From Octopus sinensis (Eukaryota): a stretch of DNA of 64,000 nt. The position numbers were made by a program, and so were the translations under genes. Positions 1,075-63,458 of the stretch are shown in pieces; position 1 is the stretch's first letter; each line of letters opens with the position of its first letter. The stretch lies in the NCBI RefSeq assembly GCF_006345805.1, contig NC_042997.1:13082001-13146000 (forward strand), written 5' to 3'. The notes under the pieces were generated by a model. It did not search any database. It had not been told where the DNA came from and saw only the letters and a program-made list of their open reading frames with translations.

Positions 1075-1441
1075 CTTTTATTTACTCTTGTATTCTTTTT
1101 CTTCTTTTAGTCATTTGACTGCAGCCATGCTGGAACACCGCCTTTCCAACGACCACTGGTACTTATTCTATAAGTCATTTTTGCTGCACCACCAAGTTAC
1201 GGAGACGTAAACACACCAACATCGGATGTCAAGTGACTGTGGTGGCGACTGGCACAGTTACAAAGACACACACATAAATATGCATACATGCATATATATA
1301 CGAAGGCGTCCTTCAATTTCCTTTTACCAAATCCACTCACAACGCTTCAGTCGGTCCGAGGCTATATAGGTTCCACACAGTGAGACTGAAGCCATGTGGT
1401 TGGGAAGCAAGCTTCTTATCATCTAGCCACTCCTGCGCCTA
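1075..1441 (-). mobile_element. CORE-type tRNA-derived SINE (OR2-like), degenerate
   Basis: Head rc GGCGCAGGAGTGGCT and tail rc GGCGGTGTTCCAGCATGGCTGCAGTCAAATGAC; internal deletion relative to other copies. Confidence 0.75.
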
Positions 1442-1512: not shown

Positions 1513-1516
1513 ATAT

Positions 1517-1907
1517 TTTCTCTTTTACTTGTTTCAGTCATTTGTTGGAGCACCGCCTTTAGTCAAGGAAATCGACCCCAGGAATTATTCTTTGTAAGCA
1601 TAGTCTTATTCTATCGATCTTTTTTCCGAACTGCTAAGTTACGGGGACGTCACGCCAACATCGGTTGTCAAGCGAAGTTGGGGGAACAAACACAGACACA
1701 CACACACACACACATACACATATATATATATATATACACATATACGACGGGCTTCTTTCAGTTTCCATCTACCAAATCCACTCAAAATCTTTGGTCGGCC
1801 TGAGGCTATAGTAGAAAGCACTTGACCAATGTGCCACGCAGTGGGACTGAACGCGGAACATATGGTTGGCAAGCAAGCTACTTAGCACACAGCCACTCCT
1901 GTGCCTA
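1517..1907 (-). mobile_element. CORE-type SINE (OR2-like)
   Basis: Matches the 13085, 38071, 40888 and 42259 copies along its length. Confidence 0.85.
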
Positions 1908-7420: not shown

Positions 7421-7482
7421 ATTTAACTCTGCAGACGAGCAAGTAGCACTCTGTGAGTGCTTAATGCATTAAAGGTGCGAGG

Positions 7483-7871
7483 GTGGAGGCGCAATGGCCC
7501 AGTGGTTAGGGCAGCGGACTCGCGGTCGTAGGATCGCGGTTTCGATTCCCAGACCGGGCGTTGTGAGTGTTTATTGAGCGAAAACACCTAAAAGCTCCAC
7601 GAGGCACCGGCAGGGATGGTGGAGATCCCTACTGTACTCTTTTACCACAACTTTCTCTCACTCTTACTTCCTGTTTCTGTTGTACCTGTATTTGAAAGGG
7701 CCGGCCTTGTCACTCTCTATGTCACGCTGAATATCCCCGAGAACTACGTTAGGGGTGCACGTGTCTGTGGAGTGCTCAGCCACTTACACGTTAATTTCAC
7801 GAGCAGGCTGTTCCGTTGATCGGATCAACCGGAACCCTCGTCGTCGTAACCGACGGAGTGCTTCCAATCCC
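7483..7871 (+). mobile_element. tRNA-derived SINE (OR1-like)
   Basis: A/B-box head GTGGAGGCGCAATGGCCCAGTGGTTAG...GGTTTCGATTCC; near-identical to 21101-21487; imperfect TSD AAAGGTGCGAGG / AAAGGCGTGAGG. Confidence 0.9.
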
Positions 7872-9849: not shown

Positions 9850-11085
9850 ACCATGCAGTGGGTGTCCCGTCCTGTTGTTTGTGTAAGTGACAATAACAAA
9901 GTTTGGAACTAGTTTTTCTCGCTTTTTCCAGATGTATATTATTGCATATCTTTCCTGCCTTCGCTTCAGGACGTAGAGTCTTAAATTTTTCAGTCTCTCT
10001 CAGTAGCTGATATGTCACATTATATCGGTCTTCTTTATTTAGTTTCACTAGATCGCCTCGAGTTCTGTCGTTAATTTTACACTGGTGACCACATTTTGGA
10101 ATAGTAATCCAGACTACTGAGAATGAATGTCCTCCACAGAACCATCATGGTTTTCTTTTCTCTTGCTTAGAAGATTCGAAGGACCAACTCTGCCAGACAT
10201 CTTCATTTTATTGCCAACTTAGTAATGTGCAACTGAAAAGATGCATCATTACTCATGTCGATGCCCAACTCACGCACTGATTTTGATTGAGGGATTGGAA
10301 TCCTTCCTGGGCCTGTGTATCCTATCTGCTTTTCATTGAGCTTCTTTTGTTGCATATTGCGTCATTGCAGAAGCCCAACGGCTCCATGGTCCTGAATCCT
10401 CTGAGAGACTTTTGTATATTCTGTATAGCCAGCACAGGTAGCTATTTAAAAAGTTGAGGTCATGTCAGAGAGGGCCACTATGAATAGCTTGTGGCCCCAG
10501 AACATTGCCATGGGGAACACTACTCATCATTTGTGTTTTCTTGTAGGTGCCCTCATTGACCAACACTACCTTCTATTTTTTAGAAAGCCATGTAGCTATG
10601 TTCCAAGTTTTCCAAATATGCCAAGAGTTCGGAGCGTGTGACTTATCAACGGTCGGCTTTGTCAAAGGATTTTGTAACGGCGAGTTATATCACGTCCACA
10701 TTTGAGTTGTTGTACAGATGCTTTAGCTCCCAATCGTAATGCTACAAGATCTGAGTCAGCAGCTTCTGCCTGGTCGAAATACGATGCTGGGTGTCAGTCA
10801 ACAAGTCATTCTCTTCAAGGAATGCAATTAATTTCCTTCAGACAATACGTCCCATGACTTTGCTGATAAGTGAGATCAGAGAGATAGACCTGTTCTTTTT
10901 AGCATCTACTATGCTCCCTCCTTTATGGATAGAGCATATATCTTCCTTTAGTTTGTTCATGAGCTTAACATTAGCGAGGGAAAGTAGCTGAAAAAGTAGC
11001 TGCAATGGTTTTGCAAGGACTCGTTTGCATGACTTGAGAAGGATTGCTGGAAATCCATCAGGATAGGTAACTGAGTTTGCATGTA
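9845..11085 (-). mobile_element. CR1-clade LINE ORF2 fragment (RT and C-terminus), decayed
   Basis: PDGFPAILLKSCKRVLAKPLQ and downstream blocks are collinear with the 51.8-53.1 kb LINE sequence. Confidence 0.85.
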
Positions 11086-11114
11086 TACTATATATATATA
11101 TATACACGCATATC

Positions 11115-11430
11115 CTGAGTCGATTTACTCGACAAAGGGCGGTGCTCCAACATGGCCGCGGACAGATGACTGAAACACGTAGAAACATGATATATGTGCG
11201 CGCATGTGTACGCGTGTGTATGAGTGCGCGTGTGTGTGTGTGTGCCTTTGAGTCTGTGTTTGTACACTTCAACCGCTGACAACCTCTGTTGGTGTATTTA
11301 CATCTCCATAACTTCGCGGTTCGGCAAAAGATACCGATACAATAAGTACCAAGCTTTAAAAGCAAATTCTTCAAGGCGGTGCCCCAGCATGGCCCTAATC
11401 TAATAATTGGCGCATATAAAAGATAAAAGA
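11115..11430 (+). mobile_element. Two tandem OR2-like SINE 3' fragments
   Basis: Two GGCGGTGCYCCARCATGGCC tail motifs (about 11138 and 11375). Confidence 0.65.
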
Positions 11431-12073: not shown

Positions 12074-12561
12074 TAATAATAATAATAGTAACAACAAAAA
12101 CAACAACAATAATAACCGTTCAGTTTCGAATTCAATGATGTTGAGTTTGGCAACATATTGATTTAAATTTTTAGTGAACCATTTTCATTCTGCTGTATGC
12201 TTTATCAATGAAACGCAGAAAGTTTAGCTTTGCTTCCCCACAGCAACGCTAAATATTTTAAGAGAAAGATTCATATAAATGTCAAAATTCTACGAAATTC
12301 TAAATGTAGTATTAATAATAATTCTATATACTATTGTTTTCAGAACATTTTCGCCATCATAAAATTGTGTTATTATAGAGGAACAATGCAAGACTAATGC
12401 AAATTCTGCCGTCAGAAATTATAACTTTTCTTCACTTCGAATATTATAAATTAACTATAAGATGCAGGGCACAAATACAACGCGCACACATTTTCATGCA
12501 TTCCGTCATCCACTTACATTCGCTCTATTACATATACATATATCTATGTACATGTGTGTGA

Positions 12562-12599
<38 letters not shown>

Positions 12600-12620
12600 C
12601 CATATATCCATATATACATC

Positions 12621-12676
<56 letters not shown>

Positions 12677-13084
12677 ATAACTATAAACACGTCTGCATAC
12701 ATACACACATACACACATACACACACACATATGTATGTGTGTATGCATGTATGAATGTATGCATGCATGTATGTATGAACGTACACAAACATACACACTC
12801 AAGGGGAGAGAGGAGGATAGAGAGAAAGCGATTAACAATAAGAGCGTATACAAATTGATTTGTCGTGTTGGAGAGTATAATGAACAATTAATTCAATGCT
12901 GGTGAGAAGGAAAATCAATACAGACTTTATGTCACGCTGCTACTGGCAAATCATTTGTTAAAAATCTACCGATCCAGTTTCAATTCTAGATTGAATCTGA
13001 TTTATCTTAAAATGGCATCGTATGTATATATCTCTAGTTATCATATACAATATTGCTTCATGTGATTCTCTCTCTCCCTCTCTC

Positions 13085-13468
13085 TCTTTTATTCTTTTAC
13101 TTGCTTCAGTCATTTGACTGCGGCCATGCTGGAGCACCGCCTTTAGTCGAGCAAATCGACCCCAGGACTTATTCTTTGTAAGCCTAGAACTTATTCTCTC
13201 GGTCTCTTTTGCCGAACCGCTAAGTTACGGGGATGTAAACACACCAGCATCGGTTGTCAAGCGATATTGGAGGAACACGCACACACACACATATATATAT
13301 ACATATATATACGACGGGCTTCTTTCAGTTTCCGTCTATCAAATTCACTCACAAGGCTTTGGTCGGCCCAAGGCTAGAGTAGAAGACACTTGCCCAAAGT
13401 GCCATGCAGTGGGACTGAACATAGAACCATGTGGTTGGTAAGCAAGCTACTTACCACACAGCCACTTC
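13085..13468 (-). mobile_element. CORE-type SINE (OR2-like)
   Basis: Near full-length; rc contains CTTTGGGCAAGTGTCTTCTACT (CORE-like). Confidence 0.9.
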
Positions 13469-14103
13469 TATGACTAAAAATATATAATAACGAATAAAGA
13501 CAATTCACAATTATTTCAAAATTATAGTGAAATGCATGTCAGTGTGTCACCCAAAAACTTTCATAAAATTTATGTCTATCTAGTGGTATGGCTTGCTTGA
13601 ACCAACAGCCACACATTACTCAGATCAAAATCTACTGTATTTAAAAGTTTTAAAAAGGGCATGCTGGCTGATATTTTCACAATATGCTCTGTGCGGGGAA
13701 AAATGTAAATAAATGTCAAGTTAATCGACCTACTGAATTCAGACTCTGCGCTTAATCTATAACAGATCTCCCTCTAAGTTAGATCTCCATCTTCGATTTT
13801 GCCGTCTGGATTATTATATGTCAAAGGATGAGAAATGGCTGCTTCATAGAAGAGTACTTCGATGATTTTTATATCAGGTTAATGTATCCCTTGAGCGAGT
13901 CCAAACCATGATAAGGGTGTTAAAACATAGTCCCTCCACAGATACACCTGATAGGTAAATGTCACGGAATATATTTATCTATTTACTATTTTGATGGAGA
14001 AAAAATAAAGTATAGGAAAAATTTTCCAAGAAAAAAAATGAAATGCCCATGTAAATTCTTTAGAAATGCTAAAGAATTTTATTAAAGAATTTACACACAG
14101 AAA

Positions 14104-14872: not shown

Positions 14873-15349
14873 CCCTCCTTGAGGAACATCATTTAATAAA
14901 TCAGTGAACTACAACTATTTTGTTATCTTTTACTCGTGTAAAATTCGACACTACACTCTTCTATAATAAATAAATATTTTACTGACCATACTTTACAATA
15001 AAGTACAAGGCATGCATTTTCGAAGGGAAAGAGTTAGTCGATACAACTGGCCCTTGGTTCTTGAATGCTACCTTATTTTATCGAGCTATAAAGTAGACCA
15101 AGGTGGGATTTGATCTCAGAACTTTGAGAAATCGAAGAAATTACCTAAAGCATATTTCGCTAAAATTCATACCAATCCAACACTTTTCTATTGAACATGT
15201 ATATTGAAGCATGGAAAGATTATATAAAATAGTTAATTTTCAGAAGAGTTCAGATAAAATCACTCCAGTTCTGGGAGGAGAAATTTATGCGCTTTTGCTG
15301 TATTTGAAAGTATCTTGAGAAAGGAGAACTAAGCACGTGGAAAACATTT

Positions 15350-15830
15350 TGATTTTAGAGTCTTTAACCAAACATAATAAATATTACCCTGGAGCAATTC
15401 GCAGATGTTTCGAAGACAACATTCTTATCAAGCAAATTTCAGAAAGGAACATAGCAGCTGAAGACATCCTACTCCATTTAAATTATACAGGAACGATGGT
15501 TATCATTTGGCCAGAGGTTGAGTGGGGGTAACTCTCTCAAACCAGTTTACATAACATGCTTTGCCTGAATGAAGACAAAGCCAATCAACTGAATAGGAAC
15601 ATCTACAGATGAATGTAACATTTCACTAATTTTTGTAACAGGATTTTTTTTGAGGGGGTGCACCCTTGACTTTCTCAAACTTGACTGAGTTAATAATTGT
15701 ATGGCAAATGTATAACTAGAAAAATCAAGATGCAGTGATATCAATATATGATTTTGTTATTGCGATTTCCAGCTTGCGATAGATTCCGCGAAAAACACAT
15801 TTAATATTGAGCTGTTTTGTATGCAATGGA
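15350..15830 (-). pseudogene. Putative decayed CUB-like segment
   Basis: ISLHLDFSSYTF and LWPNDNHRSCII* peptides in broken frames. Confidence 0.22.
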
Positions 15831-17057
15831 CGTTAGTAAACCATAATTTTTTGTTTAAATATCAAGGGGAAAAATATTTAGATATCCAAAATTTGCCTGA
15901 CATCATGGAACACCTGCATACGCAAACACATAAACATGTAGCAACCCAATTACTCTAGCCGTTAGTTAAAATTACTAATCACCTTTTTTCTTTAATAAAC
16001 GTATCAAACGATGGTTCAATTAAAGTTTCTAGAAATGTAAGTCGAAGAGAAGACTTTCAAAGCTATCATAAGAGCTACTGGAAATTTTGACTAAAACTCA
16101 TATTACCTTCTTTGAAATATATGATAAAAATTAGATAATTTACACATCTAAGCTATGGCTGAAACAAAAGGACAAAAGAAGAATGGAACGCTTGCAGTCG
16201 CAGGTCTTTTCTTGACTCTATCTCAATGGAATTACAATATCAAATGGTTTATAATATAAAAGTTACGAACAAAGTTACATGATGCTGTATTACAGCTTAT
16301 TTATGTGTATGTGTTTATGAAAAATCAATCGATAATTGATGACCGTAAATACTATCACAACATAGAACTCCAGACATTTGCCAATAATGGCATAGTATAA
16401 TGACGTTGTACCAGTCAAAAGAGGATATTGGATATTTCATAAACGTGTCACTGTTGAGATTTTCAATTCATCCTCGATTCTGAGAAAGCAGGTATTTTTA
16501 TTGTAAATTAATTTTATTATAAATATATTTCTCTCTCTCTCTCTCTCTCTCTTTACACACACACACGTAAACATATAAAGTCATAAATGGTGGAGAAATA
16601 TTTTGATGAGTTTTATTCAACACGAAGAACATTCTAATTCCACAACAAATCGTTTCGTAACTTAAAGACATGTAAATAATTTATATTATTATATTTAATA
16701 ATGAATAAATTAATTACATGCCTACGTTAATGCAAACTGCGAAAAAGAACCCTTGAAAATGATGCAGAATTTAAGCTACATCATCAGTTGAAAGAAAGTT
16801 TTTGTTAAATAGTACATTCTCGACCTAATGTTACAGCAATACAAAGTCTACATTTTAAAAGATTACGGAATATAATAATAAAATTGCTATAAATTAATAA
16901 GAGGATGTTCTAATAAATGAAAGGGAATTTTAGTAATATGATTAAATAATAACTACTAGGCATTATTATTTCAATAAAATAAAAGAGATATATTACTAAA
17001 AATGTAGAAAATAAAAGATCGTAAACACAGACAAAAAATATAATAATAATAATAATA

Positions 17058-21100: not shown

Positions 21101-21487
21101 ATGTGGAGACGCAATGGCCCAGTGGTTAGGGCAGCGGACTTGCGGTCGTAGGATCGTGGTTTCGATTCCCAGACCGGGCGTTGTGAGTGTTTATTGAGTG
21201 AATACATCTAAAGCTCCACGAAGCTCCAGCAGAGGATGGTGGTGATCCCTGCTGTACCCTTTCACCACAACTTTCTCTCACTCTTACTTCCTGTTTCTGT
21301 TGTACCTGTATTTCAAAGGGCCGGCCTTGTCACTCTCTGTGTCACGCTGAATATCCCCGAGAACTACGTTAAGGGTACACGTGTCTGTGGAGTGCTCAGA
21401 CACTTACACGTTAATTTCACGAGCAGGCTGTTCCGTTGATCGGATCAACCGGAACCCTCGTCGTCGTAACCGACGGAGTGCTTCCAC
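21101..21487 (+). mobile_element. OR1-like SINE inserted in the Penelope-like 3' region
   Basis: TSD ATGCACCTTA at 21091-21100 and 21488-21497. Confidence 0.9.
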
Positions 21488-37893: not shown

Positions 37894-38070
37894 CATAAAG
37901 CCGTCATACTGACAGCTCCAGAAGATACTCTGAATTTATATTTAAAATTCTTTTTCAAAGATTACTGTACATTAAGTCTTACCTGGGTCAATGGCTTTTC
38001 AATTTCTATTTAATATCGGTTAAACCTGATTTAGACATCTTTTAAGGGGCTTCATGACATGTACCTGCCT

Positions 38071-38280
38071 TACTCTTTTACTCTTTTACTTGTTTCAGTC
38101 ATTTGACTGCGGCCATGCTGGAGCACCGCCTTTAGTCGAGCAAATCAACCCCGGGACTTATTCTTTGTAAGCCCAGTACTTATTCTATCTGTCTCTTTTT
38201 GCCGAACCGCTAAGTGACGGGGACGTAAACACATCAGCATCGGTTGTCAAGCAATGCTAGGGGGACAAACACAGACACAC

Positions 38281-38317
<37 letters not shown>

Positions 38318-38475
38318 CGACCGGCTTCTTTCAGTTTCCGTCTACCAAATCCACTCACAAGGCATTGGTCGGCCCGGGGCTATGGCAGAAGACACTTGCC
38401 CAAGATGCCACGCAGTGGGGCTGAACCCGGAACCATGTGGTTGGTTAGCAAGCTACTTACCACACAGCCACTCCC
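38071..38475 (-). mobile_element. CORE-type SINE (OR2-like), young subfamily
   Basis: Full length; (TACTCTTT)n tail. Confidence 0.92.
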
Positions 38476-38778
38476 GTCTTACAAGAAACTAACTCAAGGA
38501 TATAAGCTTTCCTGACGTTTACAATATTTCGCTACTATTTTTCACTATAGTTAAATTATAAAATGAGCATACTTGCTCTATTATGAATATTTGCTTCTAC
38601 TTACTCGTTTTAATATCCCGTGAATCCTAACCCGTCAGCGTATTATAAATTCTACACATGCATCTATGTATATATCAATTCATATGCCTACTTAGTGCTT
38701 GGCTCATTCTTTCAGTATATCTCACCGCTTCTCTCTTAATATATATATGTGTGTGTATATGATGTATATATGTATATA

Positions 38779-40887: not shown

Positions 40888-41112
40888 TACTCTTTACTCT
40901 TTTACTCTTTTACATGTTTCAGTCATTTGACTGCGGCCATGCTGGAGCACCGCCTGTAATCGAACAAATCGACCCCGGAACTTATTCTTTGTAAGCCCAG
41001 TACTTATTCTATCGGTCTCTTTTTGCCGAACCGCTAAGTGATGGGGACGTAAACACACCAACATCGGTTGTCAAGCAATGCTAGCGGGACAAACACAGAC
41101 ACACAAACACAT

Positions 41113-41149
<37 letters not shown>

Positions 41150-41296
41150 ACAGGCTTCTTTCAGTTTCCGTCTACCAAATCCACTCACAAGGCTTTGGTC
41201 GGCCCGGGGCTATAGCAGAAGACACTTGCCCAAGATGCCACGCAGTAGGACTGAACCCGGAACCATGTGGTTGGTTAGCACACAGCCACTCCTGCG

Positions 41297-42258: not shown

Positions 42259-42499
42259 ACTCTCTTTTACTCTTTTACTCTTTTACTTGTTTCAGTCATT
42301 TGACTGCGGCCATGCTGGAGCACCGCCTTTAGTCGAGCAAATCGACCCCGGGACTTATTCTTTGTAAGCCCAGTACTTATTCTATCGGTCTCTTTTGCCG
42401 AACCGCTAAGTAACGGGGACGTAAACACACCAACATCGGTTGTCAAGCAATGCTAGCGGACAAACACAGACACACAAACACATACACACACATACATAT

Positions 42500-42542
<43 letters not shown>

Positions 42543-42702
42543 GACAGGCTTCTTTCAGTTTCCGTCTACCAAATCCACTCATAAGGCATTGGCCGGCCCG
42601 GGGCTATAGCAGAAGACATTTGCCCAAGATGCCACGCAGTGGGACTGAACCGGGAACCATGTGGTTGGTTAGCAAGCTATTTACCACACAGCCACTCCTG
42701 CG
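42259..42702 (-). mobile_element. CORE-type SINE (OR2-like), young subfamily
   Basis: Full length. Confidence 0.92.
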
Positions 42703-48920: not shown

Positions 48921-50175
48921 TATTGGGTTGACAACAATGTTCCCGCTGTTTTTCAAATTTTGAAATTTATTGCGTTTTTAAATTTCGGAATCTATTTTGT
49001 TGTTTTTCTAATTAATTTTAGTTATTTTTTGTTTATTTTCAGATCATTAAAATGGCATGTCAAGTTAAGAAAAACGAGCACTTTCAACATCTCCTTCTTT
49101 TTGCTTTTAGCAAGGTTCTAAGGCCGCAAGAGCTGCTCGTGACTTTTGTGCTGTGTATGGAGCGGGTTTGATAGTTGAAAGAACCGCTTGCGATTGGTAT
49201 ACCAAGTTCAAAAATGGAAATTTTTAACTCAAAACCACTCTTCGCTCTGGTCGCCCAGTTGAGTTCGATGAAGAGCGATTAAACCAACTTTTGCACGAAA
49301 ATTCTCGTCAAACAACAAGGAAACTGGCAGAGAAAATGGAATGCTCCCACACTGCCATAGAGAAGCATCTTCACTCGGTGGGAACGATTCAGAAGTATGG
49401 AGCAAGGATTCCGCATGTTTTAAGTGACAACGACAAAAATCAACGAGCCACAATCTCCGCTGGTTTGGTTGGTCGTCACCGCTCAACTCATGGATACAAT
49501 CAACGTTTTTTTTTTTAATACCGAATCGTTACTGGCGACGAAAAATGGTGCCTGTACATCAGTATGAAGCAGCGAAAGGAATGGCTTAGCCCCGGTAAAC
49601 AAGAGACACCGCGTGTGAAACAGAATCTTCATCCGCGTAAAATAATGTTGTGCGTATGCTGCGATTGGGAAGGGATTATCCATTACGAATTGCTGGAATG
49701 GAACCAAACGGTCAACGCGGAATTCTATGTTTAACAGATGGAACGACACAACACGGCTATTCAAGAGAAAAAACCTAATAAGCAGCATGGAGTTCTTCTG
49801 CTGCACGACAACGCCCGCCCTCATATCACCAATATGACCAAGGAAGCCATTCAAACGCAAGGCTGAGAAGTGCTGCCACTCCCACCGTACTCTCCTGATT
49901 TGGCACTAACGGATTTCCACCTCTTTCGATCTTTTTCAAATGCTATGTGCGCAGTTTCATTCAATACTGATGCACAAATGAGAGCTTGGTTGGATCAATT
50001 TTTCGATCGAAATCGGGTGATTTCTAACAACGAGGTATTGAAAATCTTGTTGAACGTTGGGAATAATTTGTAAACAACAAGGGTGAATATATTATTGATT
50101 AATTAATTATTTTTTATTAAAGCATTTAAAAATTTTAAATAAAAACCCCGCGAGAATTTAGTTGCCAACCAAATA
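48921..50175 (+). mobile_element. Full-length mariner relic (~1.25 kb)
   Basis: TIRs TATTGGGTTGACAAC / GTTGCCAACCAAATA; VTGDEKW, LHDNARPH, YSPDLALTDF. Confidence 0.92.
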
Positions 50176-50227: not shown

Positions 50228-50534
50228 ACTTCGTAACTTCGGGACCGACCAGACCATCAGATGTTGTTACACATCGCTTGTCACAATGCGTTCGCATTGT
50301 TTTAGCCTTCGAATGACGCCACCCCGCTGGCTAAGCGAGCAGGCCAACAGAAGAAAGAGTGAGAGAAAGAGTAGTGAAAGAGTACAGCAGGGATCACCAC
50401 CCCCTGCCGCAGCCTCGTGGAGCTTTTAGGTGTTTTCGCTCAATAAACACTAACAACGCCCGGTCTGGGAATCGAAACCGCGATCCTGCGACCGCGAATC
50501 CGCTACCCTGACCACTAGGCCATTGCGCCTCCAC
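50228..50534 (-). mobile_element. OR1-like SINE with alternative 3' tail
   Basis: Head and body match 7483/21101 up to CTTTCTCTCACTCT, then unrelated. Confidence 0.85.
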
Positions 50535-50551
50535 ACACACACATATATATA

Positions 50552-53388
50552 TATGTTGTACTACGGACCGACAGAAAAGAAAGTAGTCATGGAGGAGTTG
50601 CTATGTACATTCGTGAGGACCTCACACCCCAGGTCCTTTTGTCATACACAAACTCGGTGTGTGACACACTAATTGTACATATAAGGCAACTTGATGTAGT
50701 TGTGTGTGCTACATATCGCCCTCCAGATGCCACAAGCCATGTAGGCAAGTTTGAAGACTGCCTTATAAAAATAGAAGTTCTAATCACATTAGAACAACAC
50801 ATAAGTGTACTTCTTATAGGAGAATTCAATCTACCCAATGTCAGATGGCCCGAGGGCCTTTCTCTCCCAGGAATGACAAGATGTGAACGAGGACAGGCGA
50901 GGTCCCTCCTGAACCTCATCAACACCCTGTACATGGAGCAAGTAATACTCCAACCAACCAGGGCAGGTAACACACTGGATCTCTGCTTCACAAATAATAT
51001 GGATCTCATCCATAATGTGAAAGTGACACCGACACTACTCTCGGATCACAACATGGCAGAGCTGACCATGTACGGGCCAAAGGAAAGCATGGACATACAG
51101 CCTACAAGAAAACCTCAGAATCTTACCAGCTTGAACTTCCATAAGGCAAACTGGAAACAAATTGAGAAAGAGATCCTAAAACAAAACTGGCCTGAATGTC
51201 TTTCCTCGCCAGACATCGACGTGAAACTTCAACAATTCATGTCTGTAATGCAAGCCATATGCTACAAATGTGTCCCAGAGAGAAAGGCCACTGTACACAA
51301 GAACAAAATCCCCAGAGAGAGGAAAATTTTAATAAGACGGCGTACAAAAATTTCAAATCGCATAAACAAACAAATTGAAAGCAGTGAAAAGTCCCGCCTG
51401 AAAATAAAACTGTTGGAAATTGAAAAAATGTCTGAAACTCTCCCATGAAAAGGAAAGAGCAGACAAAGAAGCCTGGGCTATAGACAACATAAAATCTAAC
51501 CCCAGAGCTTTCTACAGGTATTCCAAAGACACAGCTACGGTGCACTGTAGGATAGGGCCACTCCTTGAAAAGGATGGCACACTCACAGGAAAACCAATGA
51601 GGGTATGTGAAATACTGAATGAGCAATTCAAGAGTGTTTTCACTCCACCCCTTGGGCATTTCCAAATCACCAATCCAACTAACATCTTTACCACTGCAGA
51701 TATAAAATACATCGATATAGAGGAAGACGATGTAATAAAGGCTATAGATCAAATGAAAACAGACTCAGCTACTGGTCCCGATGGATTCCCGGCAATCCTT
51801 CTAAAAGTATGTAAGAGAGTCCTAGCAAGGCCACTGCAGTTCCTCTTTCAGTGCTTCCTTGCAACTGGCAAACTTCCAAGAAAACTGAAGGAAGGTAAAA
51901 TATGCCCTATTCATAAAGGAGGTAGCAGAGCGGAGGCCAAGAACTACAGACCTATCTCTCTGACCTCACACATCAGCAAGGTCATAGAACGAATAGTCAG
52001 AAGGAAACTGATCACCTTCCTTGAAGAAAGTGACTTGTTGCCTGACACCCAACATGGTTTCCGACCAGGAAGAAGCTGCTTAACTCAGCTCCTACAACAC
52101 TATGACTGGGTGCTGAAACGACTGCTCAACCACTCAAATGTGGAAGTGATATATCTCGACTTTTCAAAGGCCTTTGATAAAGTCGATCATGGAATGATAT
52201 GTCACAAACTGCGTGATCTTAGCATAGTTGGAAAACTGGGAGAATGGCTTCATGACTTTCTGAAAGATAGAAGTCAGGTGATAGTAGCCAATGGGGCCAC
52301 TTCCATTAACACGCAAATAGTGAGCGGTGTTCCGCAGGGCACTATTTTGGGACCACTACTGTTCATAATGGCCCTCTCAGACATGCCCTCAGCCACGATC
52401 ACAAGTTATGCAGATGATACAAAAGTTGCACAGGCAATACAGAACCCTGAGGACACTAAACGCCTGCAATGTGAGCTGGACAAAATATACAAGTGGGCTG
52501 AAAAGAATAGCATGCAGTTGAATGCTGAGAAGTTTCAAGCTTTATACTATCAGCATGCAAAACTAAATGCAATACCCAATGAATACACTGGACCCGGAGG
52601 AATTGCAATCCCAGAGGCACAATCAGTGCGTGACCTGGGTATTTACATGAGTGATGACGCAACCTTTCGTGTACATGTTGCTAAATTGGCAATGAAATGT
52701 AGACGACTGGCCCGATGGATTCACAGAACCTTTAGAACAAGAGAACAAGAAACCATGATGGTCCTCTGGAGGTCACACTTGTCATAAGCCACTTTGACTA
52801 TTGCTCTCAGCTATGGTCACCATCCAGTGTCAAGTTGATCACAGAACCTGAGGCGATCCAACGTAGCTACACGAAGAAGATAGCCTCTGTGCAGAATATA
52901 AGCTACTGGGAAAGACTCAAGAGATTAAAACTCTATTCCTTGGAGCGTAGGCGAGAAAGATATGCCATAATATACATCTGGAAGATCCTGGAGGGACTTG
53001 TCCCAAACTTTGGCTTCGAGAGTTACACAAATGCCAGAACTGGGCGCCACTGCGTGGTGCCTAGGACTCCAAATTTTCCATCAGGATGTAGGACAAGATA
53101 CTGTGATAGCCTGGGCTTCCGAGGCCCACAGCTCTTCAATATCCTCCCGAAGAACCTAAGAGACCTGCATGGGGTGGATGCAGATGTCTTTAAAGTGAAA
53201 CTGGATCCCTTCTTGTTAGGTATCCCAGATGAACCAACTTCACGGCAGGAGGTACAGATGAGGGCAGCTGCATCGAACTCTCTCATGCACCAAATGGCAG
53301 TTGCTAAAAGGCATTAGTGAAGTAAAACCATGTAGCAACACCAAATGGCGGTGCCCCAGCATGGCCACAGCTCGTGAGCTGAAACTAG

Positions 53389-53426
<38 letters not shown>
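50552..53426 (+). mobile_element. 5'-truncated CR1-clade LINE (APE endonuclease, RT), three frame segments, (AATC)n tail
   Basis: ORFs 50603-51448, 51420-52787, 52835-53317; GEFNLP, TRAGNTLDL, YRPISLTS, QHGF, LDFSKAFD, GVPQGTILGP, YADD. Confidence 0.95.
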
Positions 53427-53428
<2 letters not shown>

Positions 53429-53439
53429 TATATGCACTA

Positions 53440-56400
53440 TGGCTAATAATCCCATATGCAATGCAGATTAAAACAGATATAGTTAGAATAATACATAATT
53501 TATTATATAGGCACTTTGTTAAGGGTAAGAATAAATTTAGCCAAATAATTAACAATAAAACTATTAGAATAGGAAATAGCATTACGCATAATTTAGCCAC
53601 CATCATTTCCTCCTTTAACAACAGGAAACTAGATTGCTTCTATAATGATAGAAAGATAAATTTGGGTAGTAGTAATGTGCCTCCCTATAACCGTAGAGGC
53701 AATAAATCTATTAGCGAGAACGTGAGCAACCCTCACGCTAGTTATAATAGTACTACACCTGTGACGACAAATATTAATTTAATGGATGATACTGCTATCC
53801 ACAATAGTAATCCTATTGATAAGAATATCACCAATAATATTAAACATAAACTCTCGTTAAATTTAGGATTAGGTAGTGAAAATATGTGTAATACTATTAA
53901 TAAGAATAGGGATACAGGGAATCTTGCCAAGGTTAAATTTCCTCAATCTGTTAATAGCTGCAATTGCAGAAACAGCAATCAATGTGTGTTTAGTAATGAA
54001 TGCCTGAGGAAAGAGGTAGTTTATCAATGCACTGTAAATACACAATATAGCAGTAGCGTGTACATTGGTGCGACTAAAAATAGTATGAAACATCGTCTAA
54101 ACTATCATAGATATACTTTTAAAAATAAAAATAGGATGAATTCTATGGGGTTAAGTACGTATATTTGGGAACTCAAGAATAAGAACATAGATTTTAAATT
54201 GAATTGGGAAATACTAACTTCTGCACCAGTATACAATAGAAGAAAAAAATATGTTCTTTATGTATCAATGAAATTTTCTTCATCATCAAAGCTGGCCTAC
54301 CCATTATTAATAATATTAACGAGCGAAATTGATTTTGCCTTCACAAATTAGCGTATACTTTCTCTAGATTTAAATAGCACATAGTTTTTCTACCAGTAAT
54401 CTTTTAACATTCCTCTATATTGGATTGTACTATTGGTCTCTTTAATTTATAATTTATAATTTTGTATCTCCATATATATGTTCTATATTGATTGTTTTTG
54501 TCCCGGCTTGAAAAATATATTGAAATATATATGTATTTTGATATATACATGATATTCTGATCTTCATGGAGTTTTCCACGGGTGTCGGGCGTATATGCGT
54601 ATCATATCTTAGGGCGCTGGTTTGGGACTTTGTTATACTAATTATGTAAGAAATGTGGGTCTATATTTAGTATACGTTATTTATTTTGGATGAGCATATA
54701 AGTTTTTACATGTATTTGTTTGGCTGTCTTATATATTAAGTTTATCTTTGAACTCATATTTATTTGTATTTTATTTTATTTATCTATTTATTTATTTATA
54801 TATAGTTATATATAGATATTTCTATTTATTTATTTATTCATTCATTCTTATTTATTCTTATTTGTTTGTTTTTTTAAATTTATTTATTTATTTTTTATAT
54901 TTTTTTCATTTTATTTTATTTTATTTTATTTTTTTAAGTAATAGCACTTATTAATTTATTATTAATTTGATTTATAATTAATTTACTTATATCTTAATTA
55001 ATGGTAATTTCTGTTAACTTATTGTGTATGTATTTATACGTCTTTTGACGGGCAGACATATATTTTGTAATTTCGTAAATATATGTGGATATGTCGAAAT
55101 GTGTTCATATGTATATGTATGTGCATGCATGTTTTTATATGTATATGTATATTCATGGGTGGATATATGTGTATATGTTTTTCTTATACGTATGAGTACG
55201 CAAATACATATTTAAATATGTGTATAGGTATATGCGAATGTTTGCAGATGCAGTGCATGCGAGTGTATAGATGTTTATGGATATGTGCGGATGTGCGTGT
55301 ATGTGTATATATGTTGGTATAGTTTTCCCATGCCTGTGCTGGTTTATTAGTGAAAATTTGAATAGAAACTCAGTCGAAATTGTAACGATATAGAAGTTTC
55401 AGTGGCACGATAATTTGTTTACGAAATATACGGTGTTATTTTAATTATGTATCTTATGATAATAACGTACATTGACTGGGTATAGATGTCCGTGTGCTTG
55501 CATGTATGCATTTTTACGGATGTATGTGAGGAGATTTGTATGTAAGCATGTGGGGGGGGGGCTGGTATCTCTTATGTTGTGAATTGTCTGTGTATGTGCG
55601 TGTGGGCGCACGTTTGCAAGTGTGCGTGTGTGGATGTTGCTTAACAAACCAACCGTAAAGAAGACAATTGTAATTTAAATTTAAATGTACAAGCCAATCA
55701 TATATTAGCGTTCGATTCTTAACTATTTCTGAACGTAATACTGGTTTTGTGTCACAGTTGAAATTATAAATTGCAATCGTATGTACATCTATAAACCTGT
55801 GGAACTTAAATATCATGTAAACCAAATGCTTTTATTTCTCATTTTGTATGTGTATGCAAATATCTAATGCTTTGCATGGTACTGTAGTACTATTGTTGTT
55901 CTTGGTTTTGCTATTATGTTGCTAATAATGTGATCTTCATATTGTTTTGCTAGTATTAGTGTTATTAATAATAAGAATGATGATATTGGTAGCATTAGTG
56001 GTAATGATAATAGTAATGATGTTAACATTAATGACATTTTGTAAATCAATATAAATTAATATAATGTACTCTTGACTCTGTATATCTGCATTTGAGTATT
56101 AATATGTGTATGTTTTCTAAATTGTAATATCACAATATTAAGTTGAAAAACTGTAACATTGAATATGGAACATTTGTATGTTTATTGATTTATATTATTT
56201 ATATTATTATGTATATGTATATATATATGTATAGGAGTATGAGTATATGCACTCATATGTATGTGTATATGATATATTATGGGTATTTACCCACACTTAT
56301 ATGGATGTATATTTAATTTGGTTTGTATTTCATAATCTCCGAAGAGGCCTTGGGATATTTTTGCCAATGTCTCATTTATAACTACATATTGACCTATCAC

Positions 56401-61949: not shown

Positions 61950-63458
61950 TAAGGAAGAAGATTCAAGTGAGAAACCTGCCCGGGAAGTAAACCCAAGTGC
62001 AAGTGCTCCTACCAGCACCAAAAGCCATGGAGATGAAAGAGCCAAAAAAGAAATAAAAGGAGGAAAACTAAAAGAAAAACAAAAGATGAAACAGTCAAAG
62101 AAGGAAAAACTAAAACTCAAACAAAACCAAAAAATGAAACAGCCAAGGATAGAAGCAAACCTGACTATCCATGTACGAAAAAGGATGGAAACAGACAGCG
62201 CACACGGGTGTGTAGGTTCTACCTGAGAGGTGTCTGCTGGCATGGAGAGGAAGGTGCAGGCTGCCGTTTTGCACATCGGGGACCCTGCCGCAGAAACACG
62301 AAACAAGTCAGAAACCAACTACCAAAAGGAAAAGGGATGGACCACGCACCACCTGCTCCAAAACGGAGGTACGCAGATGTGGTGCGTGCTACAAACCGCC
62401 AACATGTTATTGAAAGGGCAGCTGCTGAACAAGAAACTTTTTTGTGCATGGCACAAAAGATTGTACAGCAGCTAACCTGGCTACATCAAACTCAAACTTG
62501 CAGATGGGACTATCCACAATACACAAGACCACCACAGCAAATAGACCCAAGGTGGACACCACCGGCAACAGCATACACCTCACCCCGATGCTCCTACTGA
62601 ACATCAGAGGACTGCTAACACTCAGTAACAGGACAAAAATCCCGTTCTTGAGAGACTTTGTTGCATGCAATCAAGCCCTATGCATAGCACTTACGGAAAC
62701 ACACCTGAAACCGGACATAGCAGATGCGGAAATACACATACCACATTATGTTGTACTGCGGACCGACAGAAAAGAAAGGAGTCATGGAGGAGTTGCTATG
62801 TACATCCGTGAGGACCTCACACCCCAGGTCCTTTTGTCACACTCAAATTCGGTGTGTGACACACTAATTGTACATATAAGGCAACTTAGTGTAGTTATAT
62901 GTGCTACATATCGCCCTCCAGATGTCCCAAGCCATGTAGGCAAGTTTGAAGACTGCCTTATAAAAATAGAAGTTCTAGTCACATTAGAACAACACATAAG
63001 TGTACTTCTTATGAGAGACTTCAATCTGCCCAATGTCAGATGGCCCGAGGGCCTGCCTGAAAATAAAACTGTTGGAAGTTGAAAAATGTCTGCAACTCTC
63101 CCATGAAAAAGAAAGAGCAGACAAAGAAGCCTGGGCTATAGACAACATAAAATCTAACCCCAGAGCTTTCTACAGGTATGCCAAAGAAACGGCTACGGTG
63201 CACTGTAGGATAGAGCCACTCCTTGAAAAGGATGGCACACTCACAGGAAATCCAATGAGGGTAAGTGAAATACTAAATGAGCAATTCAAGAGTATTTTCA
63301 CGCCACCCCTAGGGCATTTTCAAGTCAGCAATCCAACTGACTTCTTTACCACTGCAGATATAAAATCGGAGGCAGCAATGATTGATTACATCAATATAAA
63401 GGAAGACGATGTAATAAAGGCTATTGATGAAATGAAAACAAACTCAGCTACTGGCCCA
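61950..63458 (+). mobile_element. CR1-clade LINE: ORF1 end (CCCH finger) + APE, internally deleted, 3'-truncated
   Basis: CRFYLRGVCWHGEEGAGCRFAH; MLLLNIRGL, LTETHL; near-identical to 50552-51790 apart from a ~536-bp gap. Confidence 0.9.

What the first reader, a model, noticed from the sequence alone, without database searches (positions are those of the whole stretch)
53344..53390. CORE-type SINE and CR1 LINE share a 3' tail with a compensatorily mutated hairpin
The LINE ends GGCGGTGCCCCAGCATGGCCACAGCTCGTGAGCTGAAAC-(AATC)n. The SINE (e.g. 42259, 38071, 13085 rc) ends GGCGGTGCTCCAGCATGGCCGCAGTCAAATGACTGAAAC-(AAGTAAAAGAG). The first 24 nt match at 22 positions. Next comes a 5-bp hairpin, CAGCT/AGCTG versus CAGTC/GACTG, where two pairs are swapped yet still pair. 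This fits the established model in which SINEs borrow the stem-loop recognised by their partner LINE RT, and it names the likely mobiliser of this SINE. I do not know whether this pair has been reported.
Basis: partly seen in the sequence, partly recalled or inferred. Interest (0 to 1): 0.7.

Follow-up and report, generated by a model that had tools for sequence, protein, structure and literature searches.

The report
Octopod LINE and SINE share tail
A dead copy of an octopus-type jumping gene (LINE) and the abundant short parasite elements (SINEs) around it end in the same 39-base, two-hairpin RNA tail; this is the classic way a SINE hijacks a LINE's copying enzyme, and I found no published report of it for octopods.

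Summary
At 53347-53385 a degenerate, 5'-truncated APE+RT LINE ends in GGCGGTGCCCCAGCATGGCC-A-CAGCT-CGTG-AGCTG-AAAC, followed by (AATC)n. Six to eight copies of a tRNA/CORE-type SINE in the window end in the same module. They match at 22 of the first 24 bases, and the stem is CAGTC/GACTG.

Six further LINE lineages carry the module 1-46 nt after the ORF2 stop, including two copies in Argonauta hians. Their ORF2 C-terminal domains are 62-73% identical to the window's. Third codon positions are only about 40% identical, yet the 20-nt box is 93% identical.

All eight tails fold into the same two hairpins. All 84 of 84 pair cells pair, and three pairs changed on both sides.

Two corrections apply:
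- The ancestral stem is CAGCC/GGCTG. The SINE and the window LINE each carry one compensated change from it.
- The window LINE is the least SINE-like of the seven LINE tails, and its end repeat differs. Sister lineages end in (TAAAAGAR)n like the SINE, so the mobiliser is more likely a sister subfamily.

This is a new member of a well-known kind. The CR1 label is plausible but untested.

The parts
50561..53427 (+). Degenerate, 5'-truncated non-LTR retrotransposon (LINE) copy. Its ORF2 is split into three pieces by frame breaks.
   Evidence: ORFs are listed. Pfam finds Exo_endo_phos_2 (E 2e-9) and RVT_1 (E 2.5e-29). The closest solved structures are LINE-1 ORF2p and R2 RTs.
50603..51448 (+). 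ORF piece holding the C-terminal part of the APE endonuclease domain plus the EN-RT linker
51420..52787 (+). ORF piece holding the reverse transcriptase domain
   Evidence: The best named relative is an Argonauta hians hypothetical protein at 55% identity.
52835..53317 (+). ORF piece holding the conserved C-terminal domain of ORF2, ending in a TAG stop
   Evidence: The search found 144 relatives. Invariant motifs include YCNSLGF and PDEPT.
53318..53346 (+). Non-conserved 3' UTR spacer of 29 nt. Relatives have 1-46 nt here and the spacers cannot be aligned.
53347..53366 (+). Hairpin 1, the 'box' GGCGGTGCCCCAGCATGGCC. It has a 3-bp lower stem, a G/G mismatch, a 4-bp upper stem with a G.U pair, and a CCCA tetraloop.
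   Evidence: The fold is and the pair counts. The box is 93% identical among LINE lineages whose third codon positions are 40% identical.
53368..53381 (+). Hairpin 2: CAGCT-CGTG-AGCTG.
53382..53385 (+). AAAC, invariant in all eight tails
53389..53427 (+). Terminal microsatellite (AATC)9.8. It differs from the SINE's (TAAAAGAG)n.
38061..38477 (-). Full-length SINE copy: tRNA-like head, CORE-like region, internal (TA)n(TG)n, 3' body, tail module at 38092-38130, and (TAAAAGAG)n.
   Evidence: The covariance model scores it at 62.5 bits.
42267..42698 (-). SINE copy with its tail module at 42289-42327
40894..41280 (-). SINE copy with a partly deleted head; tail module at 40916-40954
13084..13466 (-). 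SINE copy with its tail module at 13103-13141
1082..1433 (-). Old, decayed SINE copy with its tail module at 1104-1142
1516..1902 (-). SINE copy with a 12-nt deletion inside the tail module
11119..11184 (+). SINE 3' fragment with a decayed tail module at 11138-11176. It abuts the start of the inverted LINE copy.
11277..11430 (+). Divergent SINE subfamily 3' part. It has the box with the LINE-like C in the loop, but no canonical hairpin 2, followed by (TAAAAGA)2.
9850..11095 (-). Second, related LINE copy (61% aa identity in the RT). Its 3' end is lost at a (TA)n run, so it says nothing about the tail.
62756..63457 (+). Third LINE fragment, 5' part only, 88-94% nt identical to the main copy. 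It has no 3' end.

Best explanation
The 39-nt module is hairpin 1, one linker base, hairpin 2 and AAAC, followed by a short tandem repeat. It is the 3'-terminal RNA element of an octopod APE+RT LINE clade of the CR1/L2 kind. By analogy with stringent-type LINEs, the ORF2 protein binds this folded tail of its own transcript and starts target-primed reverse transcription on the terminal repeats.

A tRNA-derived, CORE-type SINE acquired a copy of this module. Its Pol III transcripts therefore present the same tail and are reverse-transcribed and inserted by the LINE enzyme.

What is shown:
- SINE and LINE share the tail.
- The tail lies at the extreme 3' end of many LINE lineages.
- It is under strong purifying selection.
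- It folds on the sense strand, with compensatory changes.

What is inferred:
- ORF2p binds it.
- It is what mobilises the SINE.

The direct donor and mobiliser is most likely a sister subfamily ending in (TAAAAGAR)n, like contigs L032, L005 and L002. It is less likely to be the (AATC)n-tailed copy in this window.
For: 1. The box occurs 8 times in the window against 0 expected.
2. Six LINE lineages outside the window were found through their ORF2 C-terminal domain or RT, not through the tail. All six carry the module 1-46 nt after the stop: L001, L002, L003, L005, L032 and Argonauta hians L030 (two copies).
3. Among the seven LINE lineages (window included), the last 300 nt of the ORF are 61% identical on average and third codon positions 40%. 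The 20-nt box is 93% identical, and the spacer cannot be aligned.
4. All eight tails give the same minimum-free-energy fold, (((.((((....)))).))).(((((...))))). Six of the eight have z-scores from -3.0 to -4.1.
5. 84 of 84 pair cells are standard pairs, and three pairs changed on both sides. Only 2 of 500 shuffles reach this, and slid registers pair at 19-44%. All other variable positions lie in loops or the linker.
6. A covariance model built without L005 finds it at 56 bits.
7. The G.U pairs, and the weaker and inconsistent antisense folds, point to a structure in the sense RNA.
8. On polarity: Argonauta LINEs have the module, but five Argonauta CORE-SINE copies in the same 22 kb have a different 3' end. 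The SINE stem is also a derived state of the LINE consensus stem.
9. On terminal repeats: L032 has AGAG-TAAAAGAG, L005 and L002 have (TAAAAGAA)2, and the SINE has (TAAAAGAG)2-3.
10. From the literature: stringent LINE ORF2 proteins recognise the cognate 3' stem-loop strictly (PMC4176376). A hairpin plus an 8-bp microsatellite is the CR1 3' signature (PMC8665684). UnaL2 repeats are linked to template slippage (PMC3747384).
Against: - There is no experimental evidence of binding or mobilisation.
- Only seven independent LINE tails were sampled, so the covariation statistics are modest.
- The source species of five of the external contigs are unknown (ENA metagenome assemblies and one unnamed NCBI assembly). 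It is therefore not shown that a (TAAAAGAR)n-tailed LINE lives in the same genome as the SINE.
- No LINE with the SINE's exact stem (CAGTC/GACTG) or loop (AAAU) was found.
- In zebrafish L2 elements the loop carries the specificity (PMC4176376). The SINE's hairpin-2 loop differs from every LINE loop sampled.
- The LINE copy in the window is dead: its ORF is broken and its 5' end is truncated.
Confidence: 0.8

Rival explanations
1. The LINE subfamily seen in this window, with stem CAGCT/AGCTG and tail (AATC)n, is itself the enzyme source for this SINE. The RT would tolerate the different stem pairs, loop and end repeat.
For: It is the only LINE 3' end in the window, and it shares the module with the SINE copies in the same 64 kb. 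Hairpin 1, the most conserved part, differs from the SINE's only at one loop base.
Against: It is the most SINE-distant of the seven LINE tails, with 6 differences against 3-5. It is the only one ending in (AATC)n, while three sister lineages end in the SINE-like (TAAAAGAR)n. Stringent LINEs discriminate between cognate and non-cognate tails (PMC4176376), and terminal repeats matter for priming in UnaL2 (PMC3747384).
Confidence: 0.2
2. The module is conserved in LINE and SINE RNAs for a role other than RT recognition, such as 3'-end formation, RNA stability or export. The SINE would then be mobilised through some other feature or by another LINE.
For: Conservation and covariation prove a selected RNA structure, not what binds it.
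Against: The module sits at the extreme 3' end, immediately before the terminal repeats where TPRT must start. A non-coding parasite also copied it. Both are the pattern of every tested stringent SINE/LINE pair (PMC1636434, PMC4176376, PMC3747384). The SINE has no other similarity to the LINE.
Confidence: 0.1
3. Reverse polarity: the SINE owned the tail first, and a LINE captured it by template switching.
For: Template switching between SINE and LINE RNAs is known in other systems (e.g. the passerine SINE papers listed).
Against: The module is present in seven LINE lineages that are saturated at third codon positions, including Argonauta LINEs. The Argonauta CORE-SINEs sampled lack it. The SINE stem is a derived variant of the LINE consensus.
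Confidence: 0.03
4. Artefact: this LINE copy merely abuts a SINE fragment, or the match is chance.
For: None was found.
Against: There is no SINE body sequence upstream of the box in the LINE. The same arrangement is found in six other LINE lineages. Zero matches are expected by chance.
Confidence: 0.01

Closest known systems
Eel UnaL2 LINE / UnaSINE1 (a CORE-SINE) and zebrafish ZfL2-1/ZfL2-2: stringent-type recognition of a shared 3' stem-loop plus terminal repeats (PMC1636434, PMC4176376, PMC3747384)
   Same: A tRNA-derived CORE-type SINE and a LINE share a tail of about 40 nt. The tail has a conserved stem-loop followed by short tandem repeats, and the stems covary.
   Different: There is no sequence or model similarity: the Rfam scan of the tail found no known family. 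Here there are two adjacent hairpins, and the first is almost invariant with a YCCA tetraloop. The end repeats are 8-mers (or AATC) rather than TGTAA. Nothing has been tested experimentally.
Amniote CR1 3' end: hairpin plus an 8-bp microsatellite (ATTCTRTG)n, proposed as the RT recognition site (PMC8665684, PMC4316615)
   Same: A hairpin or hairpins sit immediately upstream of an octamer microsatellite at the extreme 3' end of an APE+RT LINE without poly(A). SINEs parasitise it.
   Different: The sequence is different and so is the octamer (TAAAAGAR). The octopod element's membership of the CR1 clade is unproven here.
[quoted passage not shown]
   Same: These are molluscan CORE SINEs whose 35-61-bp tails are homologous to CR1/L2-type LINE 3' ends. 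The SINE Core/LINE CR1 pairing was reported as previously unknown as recently as 2024.
   Different: They are in a different class (Bivalvia) and are different elements. Cephalopods were not covered: that paper has 0 mentions of octopus or cephalopod.
Octopus tRNA-derived SINEs OR1/OR2 (Ohshima & Okada 1994), cited as the molluscan CORE-SINE (PMC4824008, PMC4758252); 'tRNA-Core' SINEs are a main octopus SINE component (PMC8967140)
   Same: The window SINE has a tRNA-like head and the CORE-like motif CTTGGGCAAGT, and it is very abundant (8 copies in 64 kb).
   Different: I could not obtain the OR1/OR2 sequences, so identity with them is not verified. No LINE partner is listed for them in the sources I could read: the 2013 table of SINE/LINE pairs has no octopus entry.

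Membership tests
SINE/LINE pair with a common 3' tail (stringent type; Ohshima/Okada model) | The SINE 3' end is homologous to the 3' end of a LINE | tested here: met
   The 39-nt modules align. The first 24 nt match at 22 positions, and 29 of the 35 positions outside the hairpin-2 loop are identical. Chance expectation is 0.
SINE/LINE pair with a common 3' tail (stringent type; Ohshima/Okada model) | The tail is an intrinsic, terminal part of the LINE, present in independent LINE copies and lineages | tested here: met
   Seven LINE lineages carry it 1-46 nt after the ORF2 stop.
SINE/LINE pair with a common 3' tail (stringent type; Ohshima/Okada model) | A conserved stem-loop supported by compensatory change | tested here: met
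   Identical folds. 84 of 84 cells pair and three pairs changed on both sides. A held-out sequence was recovered by the covariance model.
SINE/LINE pair with a common 3' tail (stringent type; Ohshima/Okada model) | SINE and partner LINE end in the same terminal repeat | tested here: not met
   This refers to the window LINE copy, which has (AATC)n against the SINE's (TAAAAGAG)n. The feature is met by the sister lineages L032, L005 and L002, whose species of origin is unknown.
SINE/LINE pair with a common 3' tail (stringent type; Ohshima/Okada model) | The LINE protein binds the tail and mobilises the SINE in trans | not testable with these tools
   This needs binding and retrotransposition assays.
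CORE-SINE superfamily | The conserved ~60-65-nt CORE central domain | tested here: inconclusive
It scores 24 against a shuffle maximum of 23. The literature reports tRNA-Core as a main octopus SINE type (PMC8967140). No CORE reference sequence was available.
CORE-SINE superfamily | A tRNA-derived head with Pol III A and B boxes | tested here: inconclusive
   ARAGORN finds no tRNA in the window, and Rfam gives no tRNA hit on a full copy. A-box-like TGGCTGTGTGG and B-box-like GGTTCAGTCCC are seen by eye in the sequence.
CR1 clade of non-LTR retrotransposons | An ORF2 with an N-terminal APE endonuclease and RT, and no REL endonuclease | tested here: met
   Pfam PF14529 and PF00078.
CR1 clade of non-LTR retrotransposons | A 3' end made of a hairpin plus microsatellite instead of poly(A) | tested here: met
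   Compare PMC8665684.
CR1 clade of non-LTR retrotransposons | The RT domain groups with CR1 rather than L2, Rex1, Crack, Daphne or Jockey in a phylogeny with reference elements | not testable with these tools
   No Repbase/Dfam references were at hand. The named database relatives are uninformative: 'hypothetical protein' and 'X-element-like'.
Rfam families of known LINE 3' elements (e.g. UnaL2 3' element) | A match to the curated covariance model | tested here: not met
   A permissive Rfam scan of 53200-53500 gave only three chance-level hits to unrelated families, with E above 7.

The most novel reading that the evidence does not exclude
The two-hairpin element has an invariant G.U pair, a G/G mismatch and a YCCA tetraloop in hairpin 1. 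It may be the ancient RT-docking site of a wide invertebrate LINE clade. LINEs only about 50% identical in ORF2 (L034, L035) carry an ACG.GUGUAC[CCCA/CCUA]GUACA.ACGU hairpin of the same architecture right after their stop codon.

Its capture by a CORE SINE in the Octopus lineage, but not in the Argonauta sample, would be the event that enabled the octopus-specific SINE expansion. SINEs are about 12% of the O. vulgaris genome according to PMC13282606.
Probability: 0.3. Interest if true: 0.6.

Novelty: new member of a known kind. Interest (0 to 1): 0.4.

Why it matters
SINEs make up about 11.6% of the Octopus vulgaris genome, against 12.9% for LINEs, and are viewed as an octopus-specific expansion (PMC13282606, PMC8967140). 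None of the papers I could search names the LINE that drives them.

A defined 39-nt tail shared with one LINE clade gives three things:
- a concrete candidate engine for the SINE expansion;
- a marker for annotating 3'-anchored LINE and SINE copies in cephalopod genomes, since the covariance model works;
- a compact RNA element, with natural compensatory variants and natural repeat variants, for testing how a CR1/L2-type RT chooses its template.

Conceptually it adds an example to a thirty-year-old model rather than changing it.

Tried and rejected
- **JGI metagenome scan for the box plus GAAAC.** It gave 23 hits, all chance matches inside high-GC bacterial contigs with no hairpin.
- **Other collection scans.** The same pattern gave 0 hits in IMG/VR. 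A stricter pattern gave 0 in GTDB genomes. Protein-pattern scans of GTDB and IMG/VR with the C-terminal-domain alignment gave no confirmed relatives.
- **Rfam.** Nothing for the LINE tail, and no tRNA hit for the SINE head. ARAGORN found no tRNA.
- **In-window second LINE 3' end.** The inverted copy at 9850-11095 is broken by a (TA)n run before its 3' end. The copy at 62756-63457 is only a 5' part.
- **Target-site duplications.** None of 7 nt or more were found for four SINE copies. This is uninformative; by my own background knowledge (not checked here) it is compatible with CR1/L2-type insertion.
- **More distant LINE relatives (47-52% aa identity).**
  - L004 ends in (AAGT)n and L033 in (TTCAAAGGTA-like)2. 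Neither has the module.
  - L034 and L035 have only a hairpin-1-like structure.
  - L006 is truncated by bacterial-looking sequence.
- **MAFFT alignment of all eight tails.** It misplaced the 3' stem of L005. The pair count was therefore done on seven tails, and L005 served as a held-out test.
- **Literature.** No paper in the searchable library holds the box sequence or describes an octopus SINE/LINE tail pair. Gilbert & Labuda 1999, Ohshima et al. 1996 and Albertin et al. 2015 could not be opened.
- **Source organisms.** The organisms of the ENA contigs and of assembly GCA_024449705.1 could not be determined.
Full report
**What is in the window**

The window is AT-rich animal DNA (65% A+T), full of (TA)n and (TG)n runs and interspersed repeats. 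The best named protein relative of its LINE comes from the octopod Argonauta hians. The abundant SINE matches published descriptions of octopus tRNA-Core SINEs (PMC8967140, PMC4824008). I therefore treat the source as an octopod, most likely an Octopus species. This is an inference.

From about 50561 to 53427 on the + strand lies a dead LINE copy.
- One ORF piece holds the distal part of an APE endonuclease (Pfam PF14529).
- A second holds the RT (PF00078).
- A third, of 160 aa, holds a C-terminal domain ending in TAG at 53315-53317.
- After the stop come a 29-nt spacer, the 39-nt module at 53347-53385, TAG, and (AATC)9.8 at 53389-53427.

**Check of the observation**

- The LINE reads GGCGGTGCCCCAGCATGGCC-A-CAGCT-CGTG-AGCTG-AAAC.
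- Four young SINE copies (minus strand, modules at 38092, 40916, 42289 and 13103) read GGCGGTGCTCCAGCATGGCC-G-CAGTC-AAAT-GACTG-AAAC-AAG(TAAAAGAG)2-3.
- The first 24 bases match at 22 positions.
- Two stem pairs differ on both sides, and both still pair.
- The 20-mer with up to 3 mismatches occurs 8 times in the window against 0 in 100 shuffles.
- BLAST of the whole SINE 3' half finds nothing else in the LINE, so the similarity is confined to the module.

The two other LINE copies in the window lack 3' ends, so I looked outside the window.

I searched with the C-terminal ORF piece and with the RT piece, that is, without using the tail. I then fetched the DNA encoding the best hits.

Every relative with 62-73% identity in the C-terminal domain has the module directly after its stop codon:
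- L001, L002 and L003;
- L005;
- L032;
- two copies of a LINE on an Argonauta hians chromosome, L030.

The spacer between the stop and the box is 1-46 nt and cannot be aligned. None of these contigs has SINE body sequence upstream of the box. The module is therefore a genuine terminal part of this LINE clade.

More distant relatives (47-52% identity: L004, L033, L034, L035) do not match the model.

**Selection on the module**

Among the seven LINE lineages, the last 300 nt of the ORF are 61% identical on average, and third codon positions are 40% identical. That is near saturation. The 20-nt box is 93% identical. Neutral descent cannot explain this contrast.

**Structure**

RNAfold gives the same minimum-free-energy structure for all eight tails:
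- Hairpin 1 is the box itself. It has a 3-bp lower stem, a G/G mismatch, a 4-bp upper stem with a G.U pair, and an NCCA tetraloop.
- One linker base follows.
- Hairpin 2 has 5-6 bp and loops of 3-8 nt.
- AAAC follows, unpaired.

On the seven-sequence alignment, all 84 pair cells are standard pairs. The three pairs that vary all kept pairing through a change on both sides:
- Box position 3 with 18 is C-G in most tails, U-A in L003, and the U.G intermediate in L001.
- Stem position 4 of hairpin 2 is U-A in the SINE.
- Stem position 5 of hairpin 2 is U-A in the window LINE.

Only 2 of 500 shuffles reach these values, and slid registers pair at 19-44%. Every other variable base lies in a loop or the linker.

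A covariance model built without L005 recovers L005 at 56 bits.

The antisense strand folds less stably, by 2.5-7 kcal/mol, and inconsistently across sequences. Together with the G.U pairs, this points to a structure in the sense RNA.

The sample is small (seven LINE tails plus one SINE consensus). The covariation is convincing but not overwhelming.

**Corrections to the interpretation**

First, the LINE consensus stem is CAGCC/GGCTG. The SINE and the window LINE each differ from it by one compensated pair, rather than from each other by a 'swap'.

Second, the window LINE is the worst match to the SINE among the seven LINE tails. It has 6 differences outside the hairpin-2 loop, against 3 for L002, 4 for L032, L005 and L030, and 5 for L001 and L003.

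Third, the window LINE alone ends in (AATC)n. L032 ends in AGAG-TAAAAGAG, and L005 and L002 end in (TAAAAGAA)2. These are the SINE's own kind of octamer.

In the tested stringent LINEs, the ORF2 protein discriminates between cognate and non-cognate tails (PMC4176376), and the terminal repeats take part in priming (PMC3747384). The likely mobiliser is therefore a (TAAAAGAR)n-tailed sister subfamily.

L032 is 76% identical in nucleotides to the window LINE over 1.6 kb. I could not show that such a subfamily lives in the same genome, because the species of those contigs are unknown.

**Polarity of transfer**

The 22 kb of Argonauta DNA around its LINE holds five CORE-SINE copies. Their core is 81-87% identical to the window SINE's, but their head and their whole 3' part differ, ending in (TTTACA)n-like repeats.

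So the LINE module predates the Octopus/Argonauta split, while its fusion to a CORE SINE is seen only in the window's lineage. This is the tail-swapping behaviour long described for CORE-SINEs, and it argues for transfer from LINE to SINE. The sample is small: two Argonauta loci.

**Mechanism**

The mechanism is inferred by analogy with UnaL2/UnaSINE1, ZfL2 and amniote CR1 (PMC1636434, PMC4176376, PMC8665684).
1. ORF2p binds the folded tail of the RNA.
2. It nicks the target DNA.
3. It primes reverse transcription on the terminal repeat.
4. SINE Pol III transcripts that carry the same tail compete for the enzyme.

The near-invariant hairpin 1, with its YCCA loop, G.U pair and G/G mismatch, is the best candidate for the specific contact. 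Hairpin 2 behaves like a stem whose shape matters but whose sequence does not. None of this is tested.

**Comparison with what is known, and novelty**

The principle has been established since the 1990s. CORE-SINEs with CR1/L2-type tails are known in vertebrates, sea urchin, cnidarians and, since 2016-2024, bivalves (PMC3747384 Table 1, PMC4824008, PMC4758252, PMC11481361).

I found no report for cephalopods.
- The 2013 compilation of pairs has no octopus entry.
- Recent octopus repeat papers list tRNA-Core SINEs and CR1 LINEs separately, without partners.
- No searchable paper contains the box sequence.

Repbase and Dfam entries and several older papers could not be consulted. I rate the finding as a new member of a known kind.

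The 'CR1' label fits the domain order, the missing poly(A) and the hairpin-plus-octamer end. The defining RT phylogeny could not be run.

**Verdict**

It is extended, because the module has two hairpins and is conserved across the octopod LINE lineages sampled. It is corrected, because the mobiliser is probably a sister subfamily. Interest is moderate: it offers a candidate engine for the large octopus SINE expansion and a neat natural mutant series, but no new principle.

Noticed in passing
L030:1-520, 12350-12860(-), 13350-13870(-), 14960-15420, 15330-15850 (Argonauta hians chromosome BAAFZT010000002.1): There are five copies of a CORE-SINE whose core is 81-87% identical to the window SINE's. 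Their head and entire 3' part are different, ending in (TTTACA)n-like repeats. Two copies lie head to tail. The same core carries a different tail in a sister octopod lineage.
   Followed up: partly
L034:1012-1090 and L035:1601-1675 (ENA metagenome contigs, hosts unknown): These LINEs are only 49-52% identical in the ORF2 C-terminal domain. Right after the stop they carry ACG.GUGUAC[CCCA or CCUA]GUACA.ACGU. It has the same lower-stem/mismatch/upper-stem/NCCA-tetraloop architecture as hairpin 1 but different stem bases, and L035 has a second small hairpin one base later. This may be a deep homologue of the module. The fold energies are not better than shuffles.
   Followed up: partly
window 50230-50545 (-), 7475-7675 (+), 21102-21295 (+): This is a second, unrelated SINE family with a clear tRNA-like head (GGAGGCGCAATGGCCTAGTGGT...GGTTTCGATTCCC). 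One copy sits exactly at the truncated 5' end of the LINE. Its tail and partner were not examined.
   Followed up: partly
window 11277-11430 (+): This divergent SINE subfamily copy has a box carrying the LINE-like C in the hairpin-1 loop. The box is followed by CTAATCTAATAATTGG instead of the canonical hairpin 2, then (TAAAAGA)2. It may be an older tail variant.
   Followed up: no
window 53461-54351 (+): A 296-aa ORF with no Pfam match starts 34 nt after the LINE's microsatellite. By eye it contains a VYIGATKNS...RLNYH stretch reminiscent of GIY-YIG nuclease motifs. It may belong to another mobile element into which, or next to which, the LINE inserted.
   Followed up: partly
window 49291-50073 (+): Short ORFs with an HTH-like stretch (only weak Pfam HTH hits) and a PPYSPDLALTDFHLF motif look, from my own knowledge, like remnants of a mariner/Tc1-type transposase.
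   Followed up: partly
P0005 (WP_347046854.1): A 94-aa fragment 71% identical to the LINE's C-terminal domain is filed in NCBI/UniRef as 'hypothetical protein, partial [Escherichia coli]' on a 563-bp contig. This is almost certainly animal (octopod-like) DNA contaminating a bacterial assembly.
   Followed up: partly
window SINE copies, e.g. 38265-38320: Every SINE copy carries an internal (TA)n(TG)n microsatellite of variable length between the CORE region and the 3' body. This explains part of the window's microsatellite load and produces spurious miRNA-like Rfam hits.
   Followed up: no
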